Positions 6,792-62,262 of a stretch of DNA of 63,954 bases are shown here, piece after piece; positions within the stretch are counted from its first letter, which is position 1, and every line of letters begins with the position of its first letter. The notes under the pieces are model-generated. The model saw only the letters and a program-made list of their open reading frames with translations. It did not search any database and was not told the origin of the DNA. Position numbers and translations under genes: made by a program. The DNA comes from Salpingoeca rosetta (Eukaryota; Protista; Choanoflagellata): positions 616,750-680,703 of the forward strand of contig JAWQFM010000011.1 in the NCBI GenBank assembly GCA_033442325.1. Direction: 5' to 3'.

Positions 6792-6896
<105 letters not shown>

Positions 6897-7293
6897 GGCT
6901 CCGAAGAAGAAGCAGGTGCACACGTGTGCATGAGCGATGGCAGGAGGTAAATGAACAGACGGCACACGCTCAGCAGCCAAACATCAACACCACACCTGTG
7001 TCCGGCATCATCTGACGCGTGCCGATTGTTTACGCAAAACATTGTTCATTTTTCTGCATCGCTGGCTGCTCGCATCATCTTTGGGCATCATCACCATGCT
7101 GGCGTGGTGGCCGTTAGCGTTGCGTCGTGCGGCAGTGGTAGTGGGGCTGTGCAAAGCCGCAAGGCTGCAAGCGGGCGAGCCAACCATGCGTATGTCTCTG
7201 GTGCCTGGGAGAAAAAAAAACAAGCAGCAGCTCACCCCGTGCGTCTGTGGCTCTGCGCTTTGGTTGTCTGCGTCTCTTCTTGCTTGTTGCCAA

Positions 7294-8860
7294 GTCCGCT
7301 TCCGCCGGTGGAAAGTTGATTGAAAACATCAACAAACTCTCGGAGGCGAAGGACAGTTGCGGGTTTGGTTGTGTCACAGCAGAACTGCTGCTGCCATTGT
7401 TCCCTTGCTTGCTTGCTCGTCCTACCTTCACTCTTGCACTTCTTCTTGCTTCTTGTGTGACTCCGCTTCAGCCAGTAGCAGCTCAAGATGACAGACTTTG
7501 CGACGCGCATGACACAGGCAGCGCTTGATCTCAACACCCAGAAGCTGTTGCTGTCGGTGGCCGACAATTCCTGCGGCACTCTCGTCGCGTGCGTTGGCCC
7601 GTGCAAACAACCTGTAGTGCTGCAGAAGGAGATATGCTAGTGTTCGTGCGTCGTGTCACGAGTGCCGGATCTGCTCTGTCCGCTTGTGCTGCAGTGTGAA
7701 CTGCTCTTCTCTTTTCTTCCGCCTTGTGGAGGGCGTTGTACCTCGTTCTCGTTGGAACCTTTATACAATTTCTTACTTGGCAGCCACCACCTTCCACTTC
7801 CACATTGCACTTCACTTCAAGGTTGAGCGGGAAAAAGCTCGGCGATGCGGGTATGGCATATGTGGCAGAGGCCCTTCAGAAGAACAAGGTCATCGACTGG
7901 CTGGAGTAAGCTATCCCGCATCTCTTCCTGCTCTTGCCAACAGTTCAAACCACAACAAGCGAACGAACCGTTGTTCTGCTTCCCCCAGCAGCCATACAAT
8001 GTCATTGCACCACAGCATCGCTGCAGCGCTACCTCCATTACGCACTTAACTGCTGCATTGTACGCTTGCGGTGGTCATCCCGTCGCTGCTTCTTCCCGAT
8101 CACAAGCGTTTGCTCACGCGTGACATGCGTTCTTTGTTCGTTCCTCTCTGTTCGTTCCTCTATGTGTTACTGTTGCGTCGTTCAGCTTGACAAACAACGC
8201 CATCACGTCCGACGGCGTTAAGGCGCTCGCTGACACGCTGACGGCCCACGAGACACTTTGCACGTTGACGTTCGTCTCCACATCCATCCTCCTGCTGTGC
8301 AATATCTGCGTGCTTCCATTTGTTTCCCAAGACCTATGGTGTTCCCCCTTGATGTTGCATATCGCCCTAGCACCACGAATCAGAGGCATTTCAAGCGCAG
8401 TGCTCACACTCTGTGATGCGACCATGTCTTTTTCTCCTTTTGCATGACATCTTCGTCTTCGTCTCAGCCTCACTGACAATGACATTGACGACGAAGGCGC
8501 AAGGACTCTGGCAACGGTGGTGGGAAGCAACCCCAACATCAACACTCTCTCGTAAGTGCAAATGGCCTCAAAGTAAGGTAGCACTGAAATTATTGCTCTT
8601 GCATCCTAGCAACCTGCAGACTGGTATTGCCCACTCCTTCCTTGTTTCGGGCCACACCTCATTCCTTCTCTCCTCTCTTTATGCCATCCACACCACTTTT
8701 TTTTTTTTTTGCCACCACGCTTCCAATACCTCTGCGTCTCCATCACTTCCACAGGCTGCATGAGAATGAAAAAATCACGCCTGTTGGCATCAAGGCGATC
8801 CAGGATGCTGTGGCGGACAGACCAGACTTTACTCTTGCCATAGAGACTGGCTCACCATGA
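7294..8860 (+). CDS. Small stand-alone RI/NLRC3-like leucine-rich-repeat protein (4 LRR exons); start codon unresolved
   Basis: Phase-2 exons 7822-7905 (LSGKKLGDAGMAYVAEALQKNKVIDWL), 8186-8269 (LTNNAITSDGVKALADTLTAHETLCTL) and 8468-8551 (LTDNDIDDEGARTLATVVGSNPNINTL) are each 84 nt with AG/GT borders. Terminal exon 8755-8860 reads LHENEKITPVGIKAIQDAVADRPDFTLAIETGSP*. A probable upstream exon at about 7294-7361 reads SASAGGKLIENINKLSEAKDSCG. Confidence 0.88.
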
Positions 8861-9054
8861 TGCGTGGATGTGTACACGCGTGTGTGTGAGTGCGTGCGTG
8901 CGTGCGTGCGTGTGTGTATGTGTGTGTGTGTATGTGTGTGTGTGTATGTGTGTGTGTGTGTGTGTGTCACCGGTTTGCTCTCTTGTTTCCGCTCCTTTCC
9001 CAACAAGCAAACAAAAACCCCGTCAACAATGAAACCGCAAGTCAAAGGGGTTGT

Positions 9055-13028: not shown

Positions 13029-13765
13029 ATGAGCCGATTCAAAGAAGGAGGCAGCAACCATGGTGCTGTCAGCGATGGTGGTGCAGGAACCCTGTGTATT
13101 GGGTTGATGAGTGGGACGAGCTGCGATGCGATTGATGCTGCTCTCGTGGAGATTCGAGGCGCTGGGTTTGAGACCAGCGTGAGGTTGCTGAAATACATTG
13201 AGGTCGAGCTGGAGGCTGACGTGCGCCAGCGGCTGCTGCGGCTGGGAGCTGGTGATGCCACCACGGCCAGTGAGCTGACGCTGGCCTCCAACGCCCTCGG
13301 TGAAGCGTTTGCCGCTGCTGCCCACGAGGTTGTGCGCCAAGCGGGGAAGCACATGAACGACGTGGCATTCATTGGATCGCACGGCCAGACCGTGTTCCAT
13401 GACCCAGATCACAACGCAACCCTGCAGATTGGATCACCGTTCGTCATCGCTCAACGCACGGGGTGCTGGACCGTGGCAGACTTTCGGCCCGCAGACATGG
13501 CACTCGGTTCGTTGAAGCTTTGTCCTTACTTCTTCTCTTTGTTGTGTCATATCCACAACGAACAAGAAGAGGGAGTTGGAGGAAGTGTAGCTGATTGCTT
13601 GAACCCCCCCCCCGCGCATTGCAAATCTACCACTGCCATGGCCTGCATGGCTTAGCTTGTTTGTATCGGTAACCGATACATCTTCCATGCACACACTCTG
13701 CCTGACGTCACGAACACACACACGCACACACGCACCCACACGTACACACACGCACACACACATAT

Positions 13766-13796
<31 letters not shown>

Positions 13797-15038
13797 CAGG
13801 TCTCATGCGTTAATGCTCACACGTTGACACTCGCGCATTGACATCTGGTTGTTGCTACCACGTCCATGTTTGTGTCCACGGGTTTGTTTCTGTGCTTCCC
13901 CATCTGCCACAGGTGGACAGGGTGCACCGCTTGTGCCGTACGTGGACCTCATCCTGCACCGTTCGGCAGTGGAGAGCCGGTTGCTGCTCAACATCGGTGG
14001 CATTGCCAACATCACCGTGCTCCCAGCCAACGCCACTGCAGCGGACGTCGTTGCGTTTGATACGGGCCCAGGCAACATGCTCATGGATATGGCGGCGGCC
14101 AGGTTCACTCACAATGAACAGCGGTGCGACAGGAATGGAGCAATAGCTGCTCGCGGGGTCGTGCACACCGCTCTGCTTGCGTGGCTGCTTGACCATCCGT
14201 TCCTGCACAAGGCGCCCCCAAAGTCGACAGGCCGCGATGAGTTTGGAGCCGCCTTTTTCGCGCGGCTCCTGGAGATGTTTCCAGACATCCCTGCTGACGA
14301 TGTGCTTGCCACGCTCAATGCGTTTACGGCGCGCACAGTGTGCGATGCAGCCCTCCCCTTCATCAAACAGCACAGCATAGCAGAGGTGTGGGTGTCTGGC
14401 GGCGGCGCACACAACCCCGTGCTCATCTCCAACTTGCAGCGCGAGCTCCCAGATGCATGCCGGGTTGTGCAGCGATCAGGTGCGTGCGTGTGTGTGTCTG
14501 TACGTGTGGACGTGTGTGTGTGTGTGTGTGTACGTGTGGACGTGTATGTGTGTGTGTGTCTGTACGTGTGAACATGTGTGTGTGTGTGTGTCTGTACGTG
14601 TGGACGTGTGTGTGTGTCTGTGCGTGTGTGTGTATTGTTTTGTTCATACACGCACACACAACACACACATGCAAGTACAACGTGATGTCGTGACTAACTG
14701 TGCTGTGCGCGGTTGTTTTATTCCACGAGATCTGCCACCCTTCACATCCAATACAAACCCGTCACCCTCCTCTCACTGCCTCACGCTTGCACGCCGCCAT
14801 CCCCACGACAACTCGACCACCACCACGACCACCACAATCACCACCACCAGAGGATGCCTTTGACACGGATGCGCGGGAGGCGGTTGCGTTTGCGGTGCTT
14901 GCAAACGAGACCATGCACGGCAACACGGCGAACGTGCCCGCTGTGACAGGGGCGACAGCACCGGCCGTGCTGGGTGCAGTGTTTCCCGGCACGCGACGCG
15001 TGGACATGGCGACGGCTCTCCAGTCCAGCACGACATGA
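13029..15038 (+). CDS. anmK: Anhydro-N-acetylmuramic acid kinase (AnmK/levoglucosan kinase family); exons 13029-13506, 13913-14479, 14851-15038
   Basis: Family motifs [37 protein letters not shown]|[61 protein letters not shown]. Intron phases are compatible. Confidence 0.95.
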
Positions 15039-53998: not shown

Positions 53999-56900
53999 CT
54001 ATTGATCCGACTTGGCACTCGTGGATGATGCTGAGCCAGGCCCGTCACCATGATGGGGCGTGCGTGGTGTTGTTTCGGCATCAAACACGAGAATGGCGCG
54101 CACCAGAACGCACGCGGGGTCGTCAATTGCAATCTCAGCCACGGGAATGTGGCCGGGCTCATCCCACTGCTTGAAGGTGCCAAACGGCTTGCCATCGTCG
54201 ATGTCGCCTGAGGTGAAGTCGACGACCGCGACGTGGGCGTCATGACCAGCGCGCAGCGGAAGCCCAGAGAGGTTGACGCCCAACACGGGGTAGGGGTTGG
54301 CGTACTGGATGTCGCAAACCAGCACGACACGGTACTCCTTTCCTGAGCGGAGGTTCATGCACTTGAGGTCGTGGTGCTTGCTACTGCTGTATGTGCAAGG
54401 TCTTGTGTATGCAAGCGCGTAGTCAAGGTCTGGCGTGAAGTAGAAACCGGCGCCGTACCAGTCTGCAGGCACAAACCGTTGCTTGGTAATGAATGTGGCC
54501 AGAGCGGTGTCTGTGAGGCGGGCGAAATCGCCACCCAGAATATCAATCGCAGCTCCAAAGTTCTTGACGCCGTGAAACACGCGCTGCAGACGAATTTGAG
54601 GGTCTCTTGTCATCAACGACGTGTCAAGCAGGTCATAGTGGGATTGTCGAGTGACACGGGCGACCACATAGTCCTCTTCTCTGGTGAATTCTGGCCCGTG
54701 CCTGCCGTATTTGGGTGAAAACGTATGGGTGATATCTGCCAGGTGGTTGCGGTAGCGGGCTTTACTGCCATCAATGGCGCCGTTGAAAGCGGCCAACTTC
54801 TGATCGCACCACGTGATGGCAGCAGCATGGACGTTATACCCAAACGGGATGAGGGGATCTGTCTCTGCAGCAGTGCGTCCGCCAGCCTGGCACAAGAGCT
54901 GTGTTGGTGTGTGTGTGTGTGTGTTAGAGGGGTGTGTTGCAGTAAATTATGTTTCAGGTAGGCATGGCTCTATAAACGACAGAAGTGCAAGTGGAGAACG
55001 TGTGTCATGCACACAAGGGAAGCAAGGCACAGTGACGCAACTCGATGCATACGCACACTCGCTTGGGCGCTCACCGTTTTGATGAGTTTGGTGTGGCTCG
55101 CTAGGTTGAGCGGAGCGATTTGCACAGATGCACGCAAGGATAAGGTGGTTGCCACACGCTCCAAGGCATTCCGCAACTCTGGCTTGAACTTCCAGGCAGC
55201 GTCTGGTGGGCCTTGCAGCATCAGTTGCTGTTCTCGAAGCAACTGGTGCTGCCTCCGTTCCAATTCCAATCGTTGCTGTCGCTTCTTCTTGACCGCAGCA
55301 TGTTGTTGCTTTGCATCCTCGTGCTGAACCCTCAAGGTCGCGTGAAGCTGCGCAAAGTTAATCCGGCTACCGCTGACAGCAAAGCAGAGACCGACCAGGG
55401 CCTCAAGAAGCTCTGGCATCGCCTGCCCGGTGACCGTGTGGTCCAGCGGCAAGTGGCGACCAGCGCGATAGCTGTCGGTCACATTGATGAAGGAAGCACC
55501 ACCGTTCGCTGCGTATTCTCCGTGGTGCCAAGGGATGACGCCAAACCACACCTCCCACATCACACAGCCAAACGAGAAGACGTCCGTGTCAGCGCGCACC
55601 TTCGTTTCGAGAAGCTGCTCCGGGGATGCCCAATAAAGTGTTCCCCGAACAACAGAAACAGATGAACGATCGGCAGGCCTGATCGTGCTCAACCCAAAGT
55701 CTGTGACCTTGACCGTGCACGCTGCATCCAGCAATATGTTGGCCGACTTGAGGTCTCTGTGTACGATCTTGTGCGCGTGCAAAAACTCCATCGCGCCCGC
55801 TGTCTCGGTCAAGATGCGCATTTTGTCCACTTCCTGCAGTTGCTTCTTGTCGATGTGCAAGAAGTCGTACAAGGAGCCGTTGTCTGCCCAGCTCAGGACG
55901 ACCGACATTGTCCTGCTCTTGTCATCGTAACACAGGCCGAGAAACGTCACGATGTTCGGGTGCCGCATGGAAGCGAAGATAAGCAGCTCTCGTCGCACCC
56001 ACTTCTCTTTGTCTTCGGCGGCACCAAGATCGTCATCCAGCAATTCCTTGAGCCTCGGCTTGCGCGATAGATCCACCTCCTTCAGCGCCACTTTGTGCCC
56101 GGCGAGTCGAGCCTCAAAGAGCCGTCCGTAACCCCCAGAAACGGGCCTGTCTGCATTGTTTGTCGCCCGCTTCTTGTCCACAAAAAGGGAGGCGTCCATG
56201 TCCAAATTCAGCATAGTCTCTGAACACATTGTTGTTGTTGCGACCCAAAAACATCCGTGAGACACGAATAAAGGCAAGCTGTGAGTAAATTGCGTTGGGA
56301 GGGGGGAACGCGTGTCTGCATGAGTGTGCATATGTGCATGTGTGCGTGTGCGTGTGCGTGTGCGTGTGCGTGTGCATGAATGCGCATGAATGTGCATGTG
56401 CGCACGTGCGTGTGCATGTGTGCACGTGCGTGTGTGTGTACGTGGTGTCGTCGGGCGTTACCCCTCGTTGTTGGCGAACCAACTGAAAGACTGAGCATCG
56501 TGCAGCACTTACCGATGCGTTGTTCAAGCGCACGCTGGGCGTCTGAGACATGCCTGTCGGGGTCAGATTCCGATTGCTGTCCTGATGCGGCAAATGGCAA
56601 GCAACCGCGTGATCGATGTGCACATTCACGTGAATGGACGCATCGTGGACTCTGCTGCCTCCCAGAACCAGCAGCAGCGAGCATGACACCGCCATGGGAA
56701 ATACCTCTGAGCGCCTCTTCATCAGACCGGTCCCCGGCAACTGTTGCAGCTGGACACACGCCCTGGTCTGATGAAAGCAAAGGCACGGTGTGCAGTGTGG
56801 TTGATCCATGCAAGGATGAGTACTACGAGGAGAACTGTGATGTAAAATTTGTTTTCACACTTAACGGTGGTTGCGGGCGCAAAACCGTGCAGCAGAGAGA

Positions 56901-59138
56901 GCCCTCGTGTCGTACTCAGGGCTTTGATGGCTTCTTGCAAGTCCTGCTTGTCTTTCTGTAACCTCTGAATCATCGCCTCTGACGTCGTCGACATGATGGA
57001 CGAATTAAGCAAAATCAAGTGGTGAGAAACAGGGCCGAGGAGGGCTGCTCATAGGCACCAACACAATGCCTCAAACAGCGCAAGTGCACGGCGAGCAGGC
57101 AAGCACGCTTACCCTGTTTCTTGTTGATATCCTCCAGCTCTTGCTTGTCTTGCATCAGATTGTCCGTCGATACGCCTGAGTCACGAGCAATTCCATCACG
57201 CAGGCAAGTTACAAGATAGATAAAATAAGCTGGCGTCACCACCGTCACCCTGACATATCCACAAAAGCTGCGTGGGCGCCCACAACTGGTGCAGCACATG
57301 TTCAAGTATTAATCGACCATCTTGCGCCTGCTGGGGCTCGGAGTTGGGTTTGGGCAAGGAAGCGGCGAGGTGCGGCGAAGGAGTGTCAGGTGCCAGCCTC
57401 GGCTGAGCCACCAAATCAATCGTGGCGCCCTTGCTGACTTGGTCCCTAAAAGCAGCAACCAAACACGCAGTGTCAGTGGGAAGGGGAAGAGAGGGAGGTG
57501 GGAGAAGAGGGAGGTGGGAGAAGTAGCAAGGTTGTAGCTGTGTGTTTCTAGTGGAAGGCAAAGACATGCGCGAGTGCACTGTTGTGAGCCGGTAAATGAG
57601 AGCGCACGTCACCAACGATCTTTGTTCGCGCTTTCAGCTTGCATGCAGGCAACGTACATGTCGAGGCTGACTTCCGAGCCGGAAGCCTCCACTTGACGCA
57701 ACGCTTCGCGTCCACGGTGGGTGATCTTTCGGTTGTGGTGCAGCCTGTGGTGGGCACGAAGAACACAGACGTTAGGATCGCATTTGCGTATGGGATGGGA
57801 GGTGCTGCGAGCATATATGCGCGTGTTTGTGTGTTTGACTCTGTTTGTATCCATTTCACACGCAGAGAGAGAGAGAGAGAGACAGTGAGAGAGACAGTGA
57901 GAGAGAGTGAGAGAGACAGTGAGAGAGAGACAGTGAGAAAGAGAGAGAGACAGTGAGAGAGAGAGAGAGATTTACACACACACACACACACAGATACAAG
58001 CATGCACACGCAAGAATACACACAGTGCCAGACGCACGAGATTATGGAGAGGCGAGGATTCTTCCGCAGTACATCTGCCAGGCAGAGAGCGCCGTCATCG
58101 TCGACATCATTGCTGGCCAGTCTGGAACAGAATGAAAGCGCAAGCAAGCGCGTCGGCAGGCACACGGGCAGCATGGTGAGCTTGCGGTACCCAGCACATG
58201 AAACAGAACGCACCACCACCACCACCACCACAAGAGTACGAGCAGTGTTGACTCAACAAGAAGATACCCCCTGAACGCCTGCTTGCTTGAGCTGTACAAC
58301 GTGCACTGCCGCACACCACTCACGAGAGGGTGGTGAGGCGGGGGTGGATTAACAGCACTCGTGCAAGGGCCTTGACGCCGGCTGTCGTGATGTTGTTGTT
58401 GGCCAAGCTGAGGGAGGTTACAGGGTTGTGCGTGCAGCAATAACAGAAGCAAACATATAGAGAGCCAGGATGAGTTGGTGAGTTGGCGAAGGATGGCGCG
58501 TGTTCGGAAAGTGGGAAGAGGCACAGGGAAGGCGCATAAGGCACGACAGCAGCGAAATGCCCGCAAAATGACGTTGGGACGCTGAGACGTTGAGACATCG
58601 AGACCTTGCATCGGCAAGCGGCACACACACACACACACACACGCACGCACGCACGCACACACACACACACGCACACGCACACACACACACACACACAACA
58701 CGCACACACGAATAAAACGCACTCCAGCCAAGTGATGCGATCGTTGTGTCGGAGGGCTTCTGCGATGACGTTGACACCTGCGTCATCAATGTTCATTCCA
58801 CTCAGGCTGCAAACCATGTCACGGTGGGGAGAGCATACCAAAAACCAATCGGCAAGGTGCAAGGACGAGGTGAGGAGGTCACCGGAGCACCGGGTGGCTG
58901 TGACGTACTGCAGAAGCAAAACAACGACACAAACAGAACAAAGGCGCAGACGGCTTGCTTGCCGGCTTGCCCCTACAAACCAGACCCAGCACTCCCTGTT
59001 TCCTTCCTTCCTTTGCTTCCCAACACGCACGCACATCACGTGGGTGTTGCTGCCGTTCGTGGCCATGTCTCGAACGGTCTTCTTTGCAGCATCCTTGAGG
59101 TTGCTGGCCTCCAGCTGCTTCGCCAGCGTCTGATCCAT
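53999..59138 (-). CDS. LRR - coiled-coil linker - TKL protein kinase - PARP-like ADP-ribosyltransferase fusion (about 11 exons)
   Basis: ATG 59138; LRR exons 58723-58806, 58324-58407, 58038-58121, 57658-57744; short linker exons between about 56510 and 57445; kinase exon 55075-56219 (GGYG, VALK, HRDLKSANILL, DFG, GTLYWASPE, DVFSFG); ART exon 53999-54886 (RVFHG, YGAGFYFT..YALAY, VAEIAI). All junctions are GT..AG and phase-compatible. Confidence 0.85.
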
Positions 59139-61974: not shown

Positions 61975-62262
61975 NNNNNNNNNNNNNNNNNNNNNNNNNN
62001 NNNNNNNNNNNNNNNNNNNNNNNNNNNNNNNNNNNNNNNNNNNNNNNNNNNNNNNNNNNNNNNNNNNNNNNNNNNNNNNNNNNNNNNNNNNNNNNNNNNN
62101 NNNNNNNNNNNNNNNNNNNNNNNNNNNNNNNNNNNNNNNNNNNNNNNNNNNNNNNNNNNNNNNNNNNNNNNNNNNNNNNNNNNNNNNNNNNNNNNNNNNN
62201 NNNNNNNNNNNNNNNNNNNNNNNNNNNNNNNNNNNNNNNNNNNNNNNNNNNNNNNNNNNNNN
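61975..62262. other. Assembly gap, must hide the 5' exons of the aminotransferase and GlnRS genes
   Basis: N run between two 5'-truncated divergent genes. Confidence 0.95.

What the first reader, a model, noticed from the sequence alone, without database searches (positions are those of the whole stretch)
7294..8860. LRR-only paralogue matching the receptor's sensor module repeat for repeat (possible decoy or regulator)
Seen: the four LRR exons here align in order with those at 57658-58806. Repeat 1: LSG…DAG…AEAL..N..I.WL. Repeat 2: L.NN.IT..GVKALA..L..H..L.TL. Repeat 3: L..ND.DD.GA..LA.V…NP. Repeat 4: LH.N.KIT..G..A. Intron positions and phase are the same, but intron sequences look unrelated, implying an old duplication. 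This copy stops right after repeat 4 and has no kinase or ART. Inference: a conserved 4-LRR cassette used both alone and fused to effectors, as in sensor/decoy or dominant-negative pairs such as CARD-only and PYD-only proteins.
Basis: partly seen in the sequence, partly recalled or inferred. Interest (0 to 1): 0.75.

Follow-up and report, generated by a model that had tools for sequence, protein, structure and literature searches.

The report
Head-only copy of LRR-kinase sensor genes
A small, transcribed gene of the choanoflagellate Salpingoeca rosetta (PTSG_04432) encodes only the four-repeat leucine-rich "head" that three nearby genes carry in front of a protein kinase, so it looks like a truncated duplicate kept by selection and could regulate those kinases, which nobody has tested.

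Summary
Window 7488-7588 and 7822-8860 (+) is a five-exon gene, already annotated as hypothetical protein PTSG_04432 of Salpingoeca rosetta (152 aa). It consists of a start/cap exon, three 84-nt phase-2 exons and a terminal exon, with one NLR/ribonuclease-inhibitor-type LRR per repeat exon. It matches the head of the LRR-kinase gene at 59138-57658 (-) exon for exon and repeat for repeat (42% identity, unrelated introns).

The "pair" reading needs correcting. Two more LRR-kinase genes on the same contig carry the same head, one about 15 kb upstream of this gene and one about 207 kb downstream. A quartet likelihood test groups the window's kinase gene with the upstream one and rejects it as sister of the short gene (AU p = 0.027). 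A related cap exon and first repeat also head a Roc-COR gene on another contig.

The short gene lacks the GT donor that its three relatives have after repeat 4. It reads five more codons to a stop, and a convergent gene follows within 200 bp. It therefore looks like a truncated duplicate. The intact frame, canonical splice sites, shortest branch and RNA-seq reads in all eight published libraries argue that it is functional. A decoy or regulator role is plausible but untested.

The scan had also read this stretch in another window, and had found the LRR-kinase family on other pieces of the genome.

The parts
7488..7588 (+). Exon 1 of PTSG_04432: start codon and N-terminal cap (33 codons + 2 nt), donor GTGCGT
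   Evidence: Matches the annotated protein P0001. It aligns with exon 1 of the three LRR-kinase genes, with M1 invariant. A stop lies 3 codons upstream of the ATG.
7822..7905 (+). LRR exon 1 (84 nt, phase 2)
   Evidence: 14/27 identical to repeat 1 of the long gene. The R1 profile scores 59.6 bits here.
8186..8269 (+). LRR exon 2 (84 nt, phase 2)
   Evidence: LRR_6 E 0.035 for the exon alone. 16/27 identical to repeat 2 of the long gene.
8468..8551 (+). LRR exon 3 (84 nt, phase 2)
   Evidence: LRR_6 E 0.0012 for the exon alone. 12/27 identical to repeat 3 of the long gene.
8755..8860 (+). LRR exon 4, last beta-strand and five-codon tail; stop TGA at 8858-8860. The boundary shared with the fused genes falls at 8841|8842, where this gene has AGAGAC in place of a GT donor.
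   Evidence: The structure model has a strand at residues 144-148.
57658..59138 (-). Head of the LRR-kinase gene (inferred to be PTSG_04444): exon 1 59138-59035, LRR exons 58806-58723, 58407-58324, 58121-58038 and 57744-57658
54973..56457 (-). Reading frame of the long gene that holds the protein kinase domain
   Evidence: Pkinase E 2.4e-42. About 19 related kinase loci in the genome.

Best explanation
PTSG_04432 is a free-standing copy of the N-terminal head (cap exon plus four NLR/RI-type leucine-rich repeats) of a small clade of LRR-kinase genes. These belong to kinase group 'TKL B' of the S. rosetta genome paper and lie on the same chromosome piece.

Shown:
- The gene is collinear with the first five exons of three such genes, with identical intron positions and phases.
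- At the place where they splice on to the linker, kinase and downstream part, it has no donor. It runs five codons into a stop.
- It has kept an open frame and four canonical introns although its introns are scrambled beyond recognition.
- It has RNA-seq reads in every library of the genome paper.

Inferred:
- It arose by a partial (5') duplication or 3' truncation of an LRR-kinase gene and has been kept by purifying selection.
- Its product is a five-stranded curved LRR sheet whose concave face carries the same invariant residues as the fused heads (W60, D62, T88, S118).
- It therefore most likely binds the same partner or ligand as those heads. Because it lacks the kinase, it would compete for or buffer that partner, acting as a trans regulator of the LRR-kinases. 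This last step is an analogy, not a result.
For: - Gene model and identity: (152 aa; LRR_6 E 1.5e-11, 43.9 bits against a cut-off of 23.4).
- Collinearity. Exon lengths are 101/84/84/84/87 here, against 104/84/84/84/87, 101/84/84/84/93 and 110/84/84/84/87. All are phase 2.
- Lost donor. The three fused genes have GTACGT, GTAAGG and GTACGT at the boundary; this gene has AGAGAC.
- No kinase nearby. A convergent gene lies 195 bp downstream.
- Selection: pS 0.61-0.66 against pN 0.40-0.42, giving dN/dS about 0.4-0.5. This gene has the shortest branch of the quartet, 0.42 against 0.67-0.99.
- Concave face: 5 of 20 positions are invariant, against 12 of 78 elsewhere.
- Fold: a regular LRR solenoid, closest to the NOD2, NLRP1, ribonuclease inhibitor and tropomodulin LRR domains.
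- Transcription: read counts 77, 28, 30, 63, 31, 31, 34, 14 in Additional file 9 of PMC4054682. The three kinase genes appear in the same 'attached cell' lists.
Against: - No binding, localisation or genetic data exist.
- The gene's cluster in the protein collection has one member on one contig. No assembled transcript confirms the splice pattern or the 3' end.
- Read counts are low.
- dS is close to saturation, so dN/dS is only qualitative and is averaged over both lineages.
- The quartet tree is unrooted, so the direction (truncation or later fusion) rests on parsimony.
- No orthologue in another species was found that could show long-term retention. Both searches are weak for this purpose.
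- Conservation of the concave face could reflect an intramolecular contact in the kinases that has no meaning in the free protein.
Confidence: 0.5

Rival explanations
1. It is an independent small LRR scaffold. The gene began as a truncated duplicate but now has a partner and a role unrelated to the LRR-kinases, like the many small RI-type LRR proteins of cilia and the cytoskeleton (LRRC34, DRC5, the tropomodulin LRR domain).
For: - The best solved-structure matches include axonemal LRR proteins and the tropomodulin/leiomodin LRR.
- The precomputed Pfam hit is LRR_TMOD-LMOD.
- Identity to the fused heads is only 36-42%.
- Its expression is broader than that of the two kinase genes that are nearly silent in colonies.
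Against: - The invariant concave-face residues are shared with the fused heads.
- It has the shortest branch, so it has changed least from the common ancestor.
- No orthologue among small proteins elsewhere was found.
Confidence: 0.25
2. It is a non-functional relic: a gene fragment left by a partial duplication, still annotated and weakly transcribed from the inherited promoter, with no selected function.
For: - Read counts are low (14-77 per library).
- There is no transcript-derived member in its protein cluster and no known orthologue.
- The ORF ends in what would be former intron sequence.
Against: - Introns and synonymous sites are close to saturation, yet 152 codons remain open.
- All four introns keep GT...AG, the LRR core positions are 55-70% identical to the relatives, and the branch is the shortest of the four.
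- A random 152-codon stretch stays open with probability about (61/64)^152, roughly 0.0007 (my arithmetic).
Confidence: 0.15
3. The head-only gene is the ancestral form. The LRR-kinase and LRR-Roc-COR genes arose later by fusing copies of it to effector genes.
For: - The unrooted tree allows the root on the branch of the short gene.
- The short gene has the shortest branch.
- The same kind of head occurs on two different effector types.
Against: - Heads with a homologous first exon are attached to kinases on other contigs (L007, L008) and to ROCO arrays on many contigs.
- The ancestor of the four-repeat clade is therefore most simply a fused gene.
- The stop of the short gene lies just past a splice boundary that all fused relatives share.
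Confidence: 0.1

Closest known systems
CARD-only and PYD-only proteins of primates (COPs such as CARD16-18, and POPs)
   Same: Small genes that consist of just the interaction domain of a multidomain signalling protein. They arose by partial duplication and lie close to the parent genes. (Established knowledge, not tested here.)
   Different: COPs and POPs are very recent, highly similar copies of death-fold domains with shown inhibitory binding. This gene is an old copy (36-42% identity) of an LRR head, has three candidate parent genes, and has no functional data.
Plant LRR receptor-like proteins versus LRR receptor kinases, and truncated forms such as Xa21D
   Same: The same LRR module exists with and without a kinase in one gene family. 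The kinase-less forms act with or against the kinases. (Established knowledge.)
   Different: The plant modules are extracellular plant-specific LRRs with signal peptide and membrane anchor. This one is a short RI/NLR-type LRR with no secretion signal annotated or seen, and is presumably cytosolic.
LRR domains of NOD2/NLRC and NLRP proteins and of ribonuclease inhibitor
   Same: 28-residue alpha/beta repeats. Pfam LRR_6 passes its cut-off. The best fold matches are NOD2 (36% identity over 115 columns), NLRP1 and ribonuclease inhibitor. One repeat per exon, as in NLRC-type genes.
   Different: There is no NACHT domain, so the UniRef name 'NOD3 protein' overstates the case. It has only four repeats plus caps.
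S. rosetta 'TKL B' LRR-kinase(-PARP-like) family and the one-LRR-per-exon ROCO families reported earlier in this scan
   Same: Homologous first exon and 84-nt phase-2 LRR exons.
   Different: It has no effector part at all. Its repeat number is fixed at four and its concave face is conserved, not hypervariable.

Membership tests
RI/NLR-type leucine-rich repeat proteins (Pfam LRR_6, PF13516) | Profile match above the curated cut-off | tested here: met
   E 1.5e-11, 43.9 bits against a cut-off of 23.4.
RI/NLR-type leucine-rich repeat proteins (Pfam LRR_6, PF13516) | 28-residue strand-helix repeats forming a curved solenoid | tested here: met
   The model has five strands alternating with four helices, with pLDDT 72-90 over residues 41-150 by 10-residue blocks. 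Foldseek places it with the NOD2, NLRP1 and RI LRR domains at E 3e-6 to 6e-4.
NLR proteins (the UniRef name is 'NOD3 protein') | Central NACHT/NB-ARC nucleotide-binding domain | tested here: not met
   The 152-aa protein gives only LRR hits in Pfam.
Tropomodulin/leiomodin (precomputed hit PF27087, LRR_TMOD-LMOD) | LRR cap domain similar to the Tmod C-terminal half | tested here: inconclusive
   The precomputed hit is listed. The model is not in the Pfam copy I could scan. Fold matches to Tmod/Lmod have only 18-19% identity.
Tropomodulin/leiomodin (precomputed hit PF27087, LRR_TMOD-LMOD) | N-terminal tropomyosin- and actin-binding region | tested here: not met
   Only 34 residues precede the repeats. 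They align with the cap exon of the LRR-kinase genes.
S. rosetta TKL-B LRR-kinase(-PARP-like) genes | Head made of a homologous start exon plus 84-nt phase-2 LRR exons | tested here: met
S. rosetta TKL-B LRR-kinase(-PARP-like) genes | Protein kinase domain downstream of the head | tested here: not met
   There is a stop at 8858-8860. The genome-wide kinase search finds no kinase match near C11:625 kb. A convergent cobW gene follows.
Domain-only decoy or regulator paralogues (COP/POP-like) | Consists only of the interaction domain of linked multidomain parent genes | tested here: met
   The candidate parents lie about 15 kb upstream, 50 kb downstream and 207 kb downstream on the same contig.
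Domain-only decoy or regulator paralogues (COP/POP-like) | Binds the parent protein or its ligand and alters signalling | not testable with these tools
   This needs pull-down, co-expression in cells, or genetics.

The most novel reading that the evidence does not exclude
A close unicellular relative of animals regulates an expanded family of cytosolic LRR-kinase(-PARP-like) sensors with a dedicated head-only protein that competes for their ligand or partner. This would be a premetazoan, independently evolved counterpart of the CARD-only/PYD-only and receptor-like-protein decoys of animal and plant immunity.
Probability: 0.25. Interest if true: 0.6.

Novelty: new member of a known kind. Interest (0 to 1): 0.38.

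Why it matters
If the head-only protein does modulate the LRR-kinases, it offers a simple handle on a large, uncharacterised sensor-like family in the closest living relatives of animals. S. rosetta can now be edited, and a 152-residue protein is easy to express. It could therefore be used as bait for the unknown ligand or partner of the heads. It would also show that domain-only regulators of multidomain sensors evolve repeatedly by partial duplication. If it has no such role, it is one more lineage-specific small LRR gene.

Tried and rejected
- Single-exon searches of the genome and a whole-protein search. Exon-sized matches score too low to rank relatives, and long multi-repeat NLRC-like genes outrank the true paralogues. 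I therefore fetched loci and compared them locally.
- Word search for small homologues of P0001, 84-266 aa. It found only itself.
- Exhaustive representative search. There were 29,785 hits, and the top 150 are giant multi-repeat LRR proteins whose scores add up over many repeats. It is useless for orthology. It shows only that no close small relative scores above about 152 bits, the lowest score listed.
- Kinase search with the whole 495-aa frame failed twice on the server. It was repeated with the kinase core.
- I looked for the same four-repeat head in front of the other 16 TKL-B kinase loci. They have either longer arrays of a different repeat type (L007-L009, L020) or nothing recognisable within 6-7 kb. 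The four-repeat head is therefore confined to contig C11.
- ART/PARP part of the long gene: no Pfam hit at E 0.01 or better and no PDB sequence hit for the 315-aa frame. I did not fold it.
- Full-text search for PTSG_04432 and for papers on S. rosetta LRR/TKL kinases. Nothing describes this gene.
- Rejected: that the extra open stretch at 58907-58839 (-) is an exon of the long gene. The homologous exon 1 of all four genes splices directly to repeat 1 in phase 2.
- Joined step left out: the spliced heads of the three kinase genes have no reference. For the short gene I used the annotated protein that a tool returned.

Full report
**Where we are.** The window is G000:C11:616750-680703 of a 55.4-Mb, 68-contig assembly. 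The record that carries the gene is GL832964.1 of GCA_000188695.1, Salpingoeca rosetta. The sequence is eukaryotic: about 55% G+C, many microsatellites and short GT...AG introns.

**The observation.** I read both stretches and fixed the exon borders with scripts.
- On the + strand the short gene has a start exon at 7488-7588. LRR exons follow at 7822-7905, 8186-8269 and 8468-8551 (84 nt each), and a last exon at 8755-8860 ends in TGA.
- On the - strand the long gene has exon 1 at 59138-59035 and LRR exons at 58806-58723, 58407-58324, 58121-58038 and 57744-57658.
- Every intron is GT...AG and splits a codon after its second base.
- Each repeat of the short gene matches the repeat of the same rank in the long gene best: 14, 16, 12 and 10 identities of 27, against 2-10 off the diagonal.
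- The introns share nothing beyond short, mostly low-complexity matches of 25 nt or less. A DNA search of the whole genome with 7294-8860 returns only the query.

**The gene is annotated.** I searched the open frame around LRR exon 2 by reference. This returned P0001, "hypothetical protein PTSG_04432 [Salpingoeca rosetta]", 152 aa. Its sequence equals my exon model. It passes Pfam LRR_6 (E 1.5e-11, 43.9 bits, cut-off 23.4) and has a precomputed hit to LRR_TMOD-LMOD. UniRef calls it "NOD3 protein", but it has no NACHT domain.

A single-sequence AlphaFold model (mean pLDDT 71; 72-90 by 10-residue blocks over residues 41-150) is a regular solenoid of five strands and four helices. Its best structural neighbours are the LRR domains of NOD2 (36% identity over 115 columns), NLRP1, DRC5, ribonuclease inhibitor and tropomodulin/leiomodin.

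**It is not a pair.** Exon-wise searches of the genome pointed to further copies on the same contig. After fetching them, I found the same five-exon head in two more genes. One lies at C11:609.2-610.6 kb (L002), about 15 kb upstream of the short gene. The other lies at C11:831.9-833.1 kb (L003).
- Exon lengths are 101/84/84/84/87 for the short gene (to the shared boundary). The window's long gene has 104/84/84/84/87, the upstream gene 101/84/84/84/93 and the downstream gene 110/84/84/84/87. All are phase 2.
- Each of the three long genes has a kinase 1-4 kb further on. The window frame 54973-56457 (-) gives Pkinase E 2.4e-42. The others are at C11:612718 and C11:836049, and the upstream gene is called as a 1050-aa kinase.
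- The kinase core finds about 19 loci in the genome. That matches the 19 "TKL B" kinases listed in Additional file 5 of the genome paper (PMC4054682). The only three of them numbered 044xx are PTSG_04430, 04444 and 04482. By gene order these are the three C11 genes. This mapping is inferred for 04444 and 04482.
- The other TKL-B loci do not have this head within the 6-7 kb I fetched. Some have longer arrays of another repeat type behind a weakly similar first exon.

**Who is closest to whom.** Over about 146 aligned residues the short gene is 42.5% identical to the window's long gene, 40.4% to the downstream gene and 36.3% to the upstream one. The two nearest long genes are 41.1% identical to each other. 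With four taxa there are three unrooted trees.
- LG+G4 likelihood prefers (short gene, downstream gene | window gene, upstream gene), with RELL support 0.97.
- Both alternatives, including short gene plus window gene, are rejected (AU p = 0.027).
- The split of window gene plus upstream gene has 97% bootstrap support.
- The short gene has the shortest branch (0.42 substitutions per site against 0.67-0.99).

Those steps are left out.

**How the short gene ends.** In the three long genes the fifth exon ends with a phase-2 donor (GTACGT, GTAAGG, GTACGT). At the aligned position, 8841|8842, the short gene has AGAGAC. It continues for five codons (ETGSP) to TGA. The last shared residues (FTLAI, against VSLDM and FTLGV) form the fifth strand of the model, so the whole folded head is retained.

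About 195 bp past the stop lies the 3' end of a convergent cobW-like gene. No kinase-like sequence exists nearby. This is the pattern expected of a partial duplication or 3' truncation of an LRR-kinase gene.

The opposite direction, with a head-only ancestor, is less parsimonious. Heads with a homologous first exon are fused to kinases on other contigs and to Roc-COR genes. I could not root the tree, however.

**The head is a shared module.** A profile of repeat 1 scores 56-61 bits on the four C11 genes. The next hit, at 34.5 bits, is at C14:1,576,142. That locus (L023) has a homologous cap exon, repeat 1 and at least four more LRR exons, followed by Roc (E 2.9e-6) and COR-A (E 3.8e-16). A profile of exon 1 also hits, weakly, the starts of many one-LRR-per-exon arrays (compare).

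**Is it alive?**
- Synonymous differences to the three relatives are near saturation (pS 0.61-0.66), while pN is 0.40-0.42. This gives dN/dS of roughly 0.4-0.5, a qualitative figure only.
- Introns are unrecognisable between copies, yet all 152 codons are open and all eight splice signals are canonical.
- The LRR core positions are 55-70% identical to the relatives.
- The predicted concave face is not hypervariable. Five of its 20 positions are invariant in all four genes (G37, W60, D62, T88, S118), against 12 of 78 outside core and face.
- Additional file 9 of PMC4054682 lists PTSG_04432 among genes higher in attached and swimming cells. Its read counts are 77, 28, 30, 63, 31, 31, 34, 14 in the eight libraries.
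- The three kinase genes appear in the "attached" lists with counts of the same order, although their coding sequences are about seven times longer.

Against this, the protein's cluster in the large collection has a single member on a single contig. I therefore have no assembled transcript that proves the splice pattern or the 3' end.

**Mechanism.** Shown: a transcribed, intact, head-only paralogue of three linked LRR-kinase genes. Inferred: it folds as the same curved sheet and keeps the same face. It can therefore bind what the heads bind, whether a ligand, a partner protein or a part of the kinases themselves. Without a kinase it would compete or buffer. I put about 0.5 on the whole statement, made up of roughly 0.8 on the origin and 0.35-0.4 on the regulatory role. 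The rivals are an independent LRR scaffold (0.25), a relic (0.15) and an ancestral head-only gene (0.1).

**Comparison and novelty.** The logic resembles CARD-only/PYD-only proteins and plant receptor-like proteins (from established knowledge). Membership in NLRs or tropomodulins fails on their defining domains. I found no paper that mentions the gene or the head-only form. It is a new member of a known kind: a domain-only paralogue of a multidomain signalling family. The scan also read this same stretch in another window, and it had reported the LRR-kinase-PARP-like family on other pieces of this genome. I confirmed the kinase but not the PARP-like part, which gave no hit.

Noticed in passing
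L023:4314-9998 (G000:C14:1575.8-1581.5 kb): An LRR-Roc-COR (ROCO) gene whose cap exon and first repeat are the closest relatives of the C11 heads outside that contig (34.5 bits). It shows that the same N-terminal module is combined with two different effector types.
   Followed up: partly
window 54973-59138 (-), compared with L002 and L003: The LRR head and the kinase of the long gene may give different nearest relatives. The head groups with the upstream gene (bootstrap 97). The kinase core is 63% identical to the downstream gene's kinase and 59% to the upstream one's, with kinases from contig C26 in between. This could mean exon shuffling or gene conversion within the family.
   Followed up: no
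L008:1278-4782 (G000:C26:549.8-553.3 kb): A TKL-B kinase gene with at least ten near-identical one-repeat exons (LSNNSIEKEGCVALA...) spaced about 270-290 bp apart. It looks like recent tandem exon duplication, in contrast with the fixed four repeats of the C11 genes.
   Followed up: no
window 6800-6897 and 8862-8968: A long (TTG)n tract lies about 590 bp upstream of the start codon. A (GT)n/(GC GT)n tract begins within a few bases of the stop codon. Such microsatellites fill most introns and spacers of this window.
   Followed up: no
window 13029-15038 (+): An intron-containing gene with a Pfam AnmK hit (anhydro-N-acetylmuramic acid kinase, a bacterial-type peptidoglycan recycling enzyme) lies two genes downstream (gene table). 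Another note of the scan already covers it.
   Followed up: no
window 61976-62262: An assembly gap (a run of N) flanked by CA/GT repeats.
   Followed up: no
P0001 annotation: UniRef names the 152-aa protein 'NOD3 protein', although it has no NACHT domain. The name comes only from LRR similarity.
   Followed up: yes
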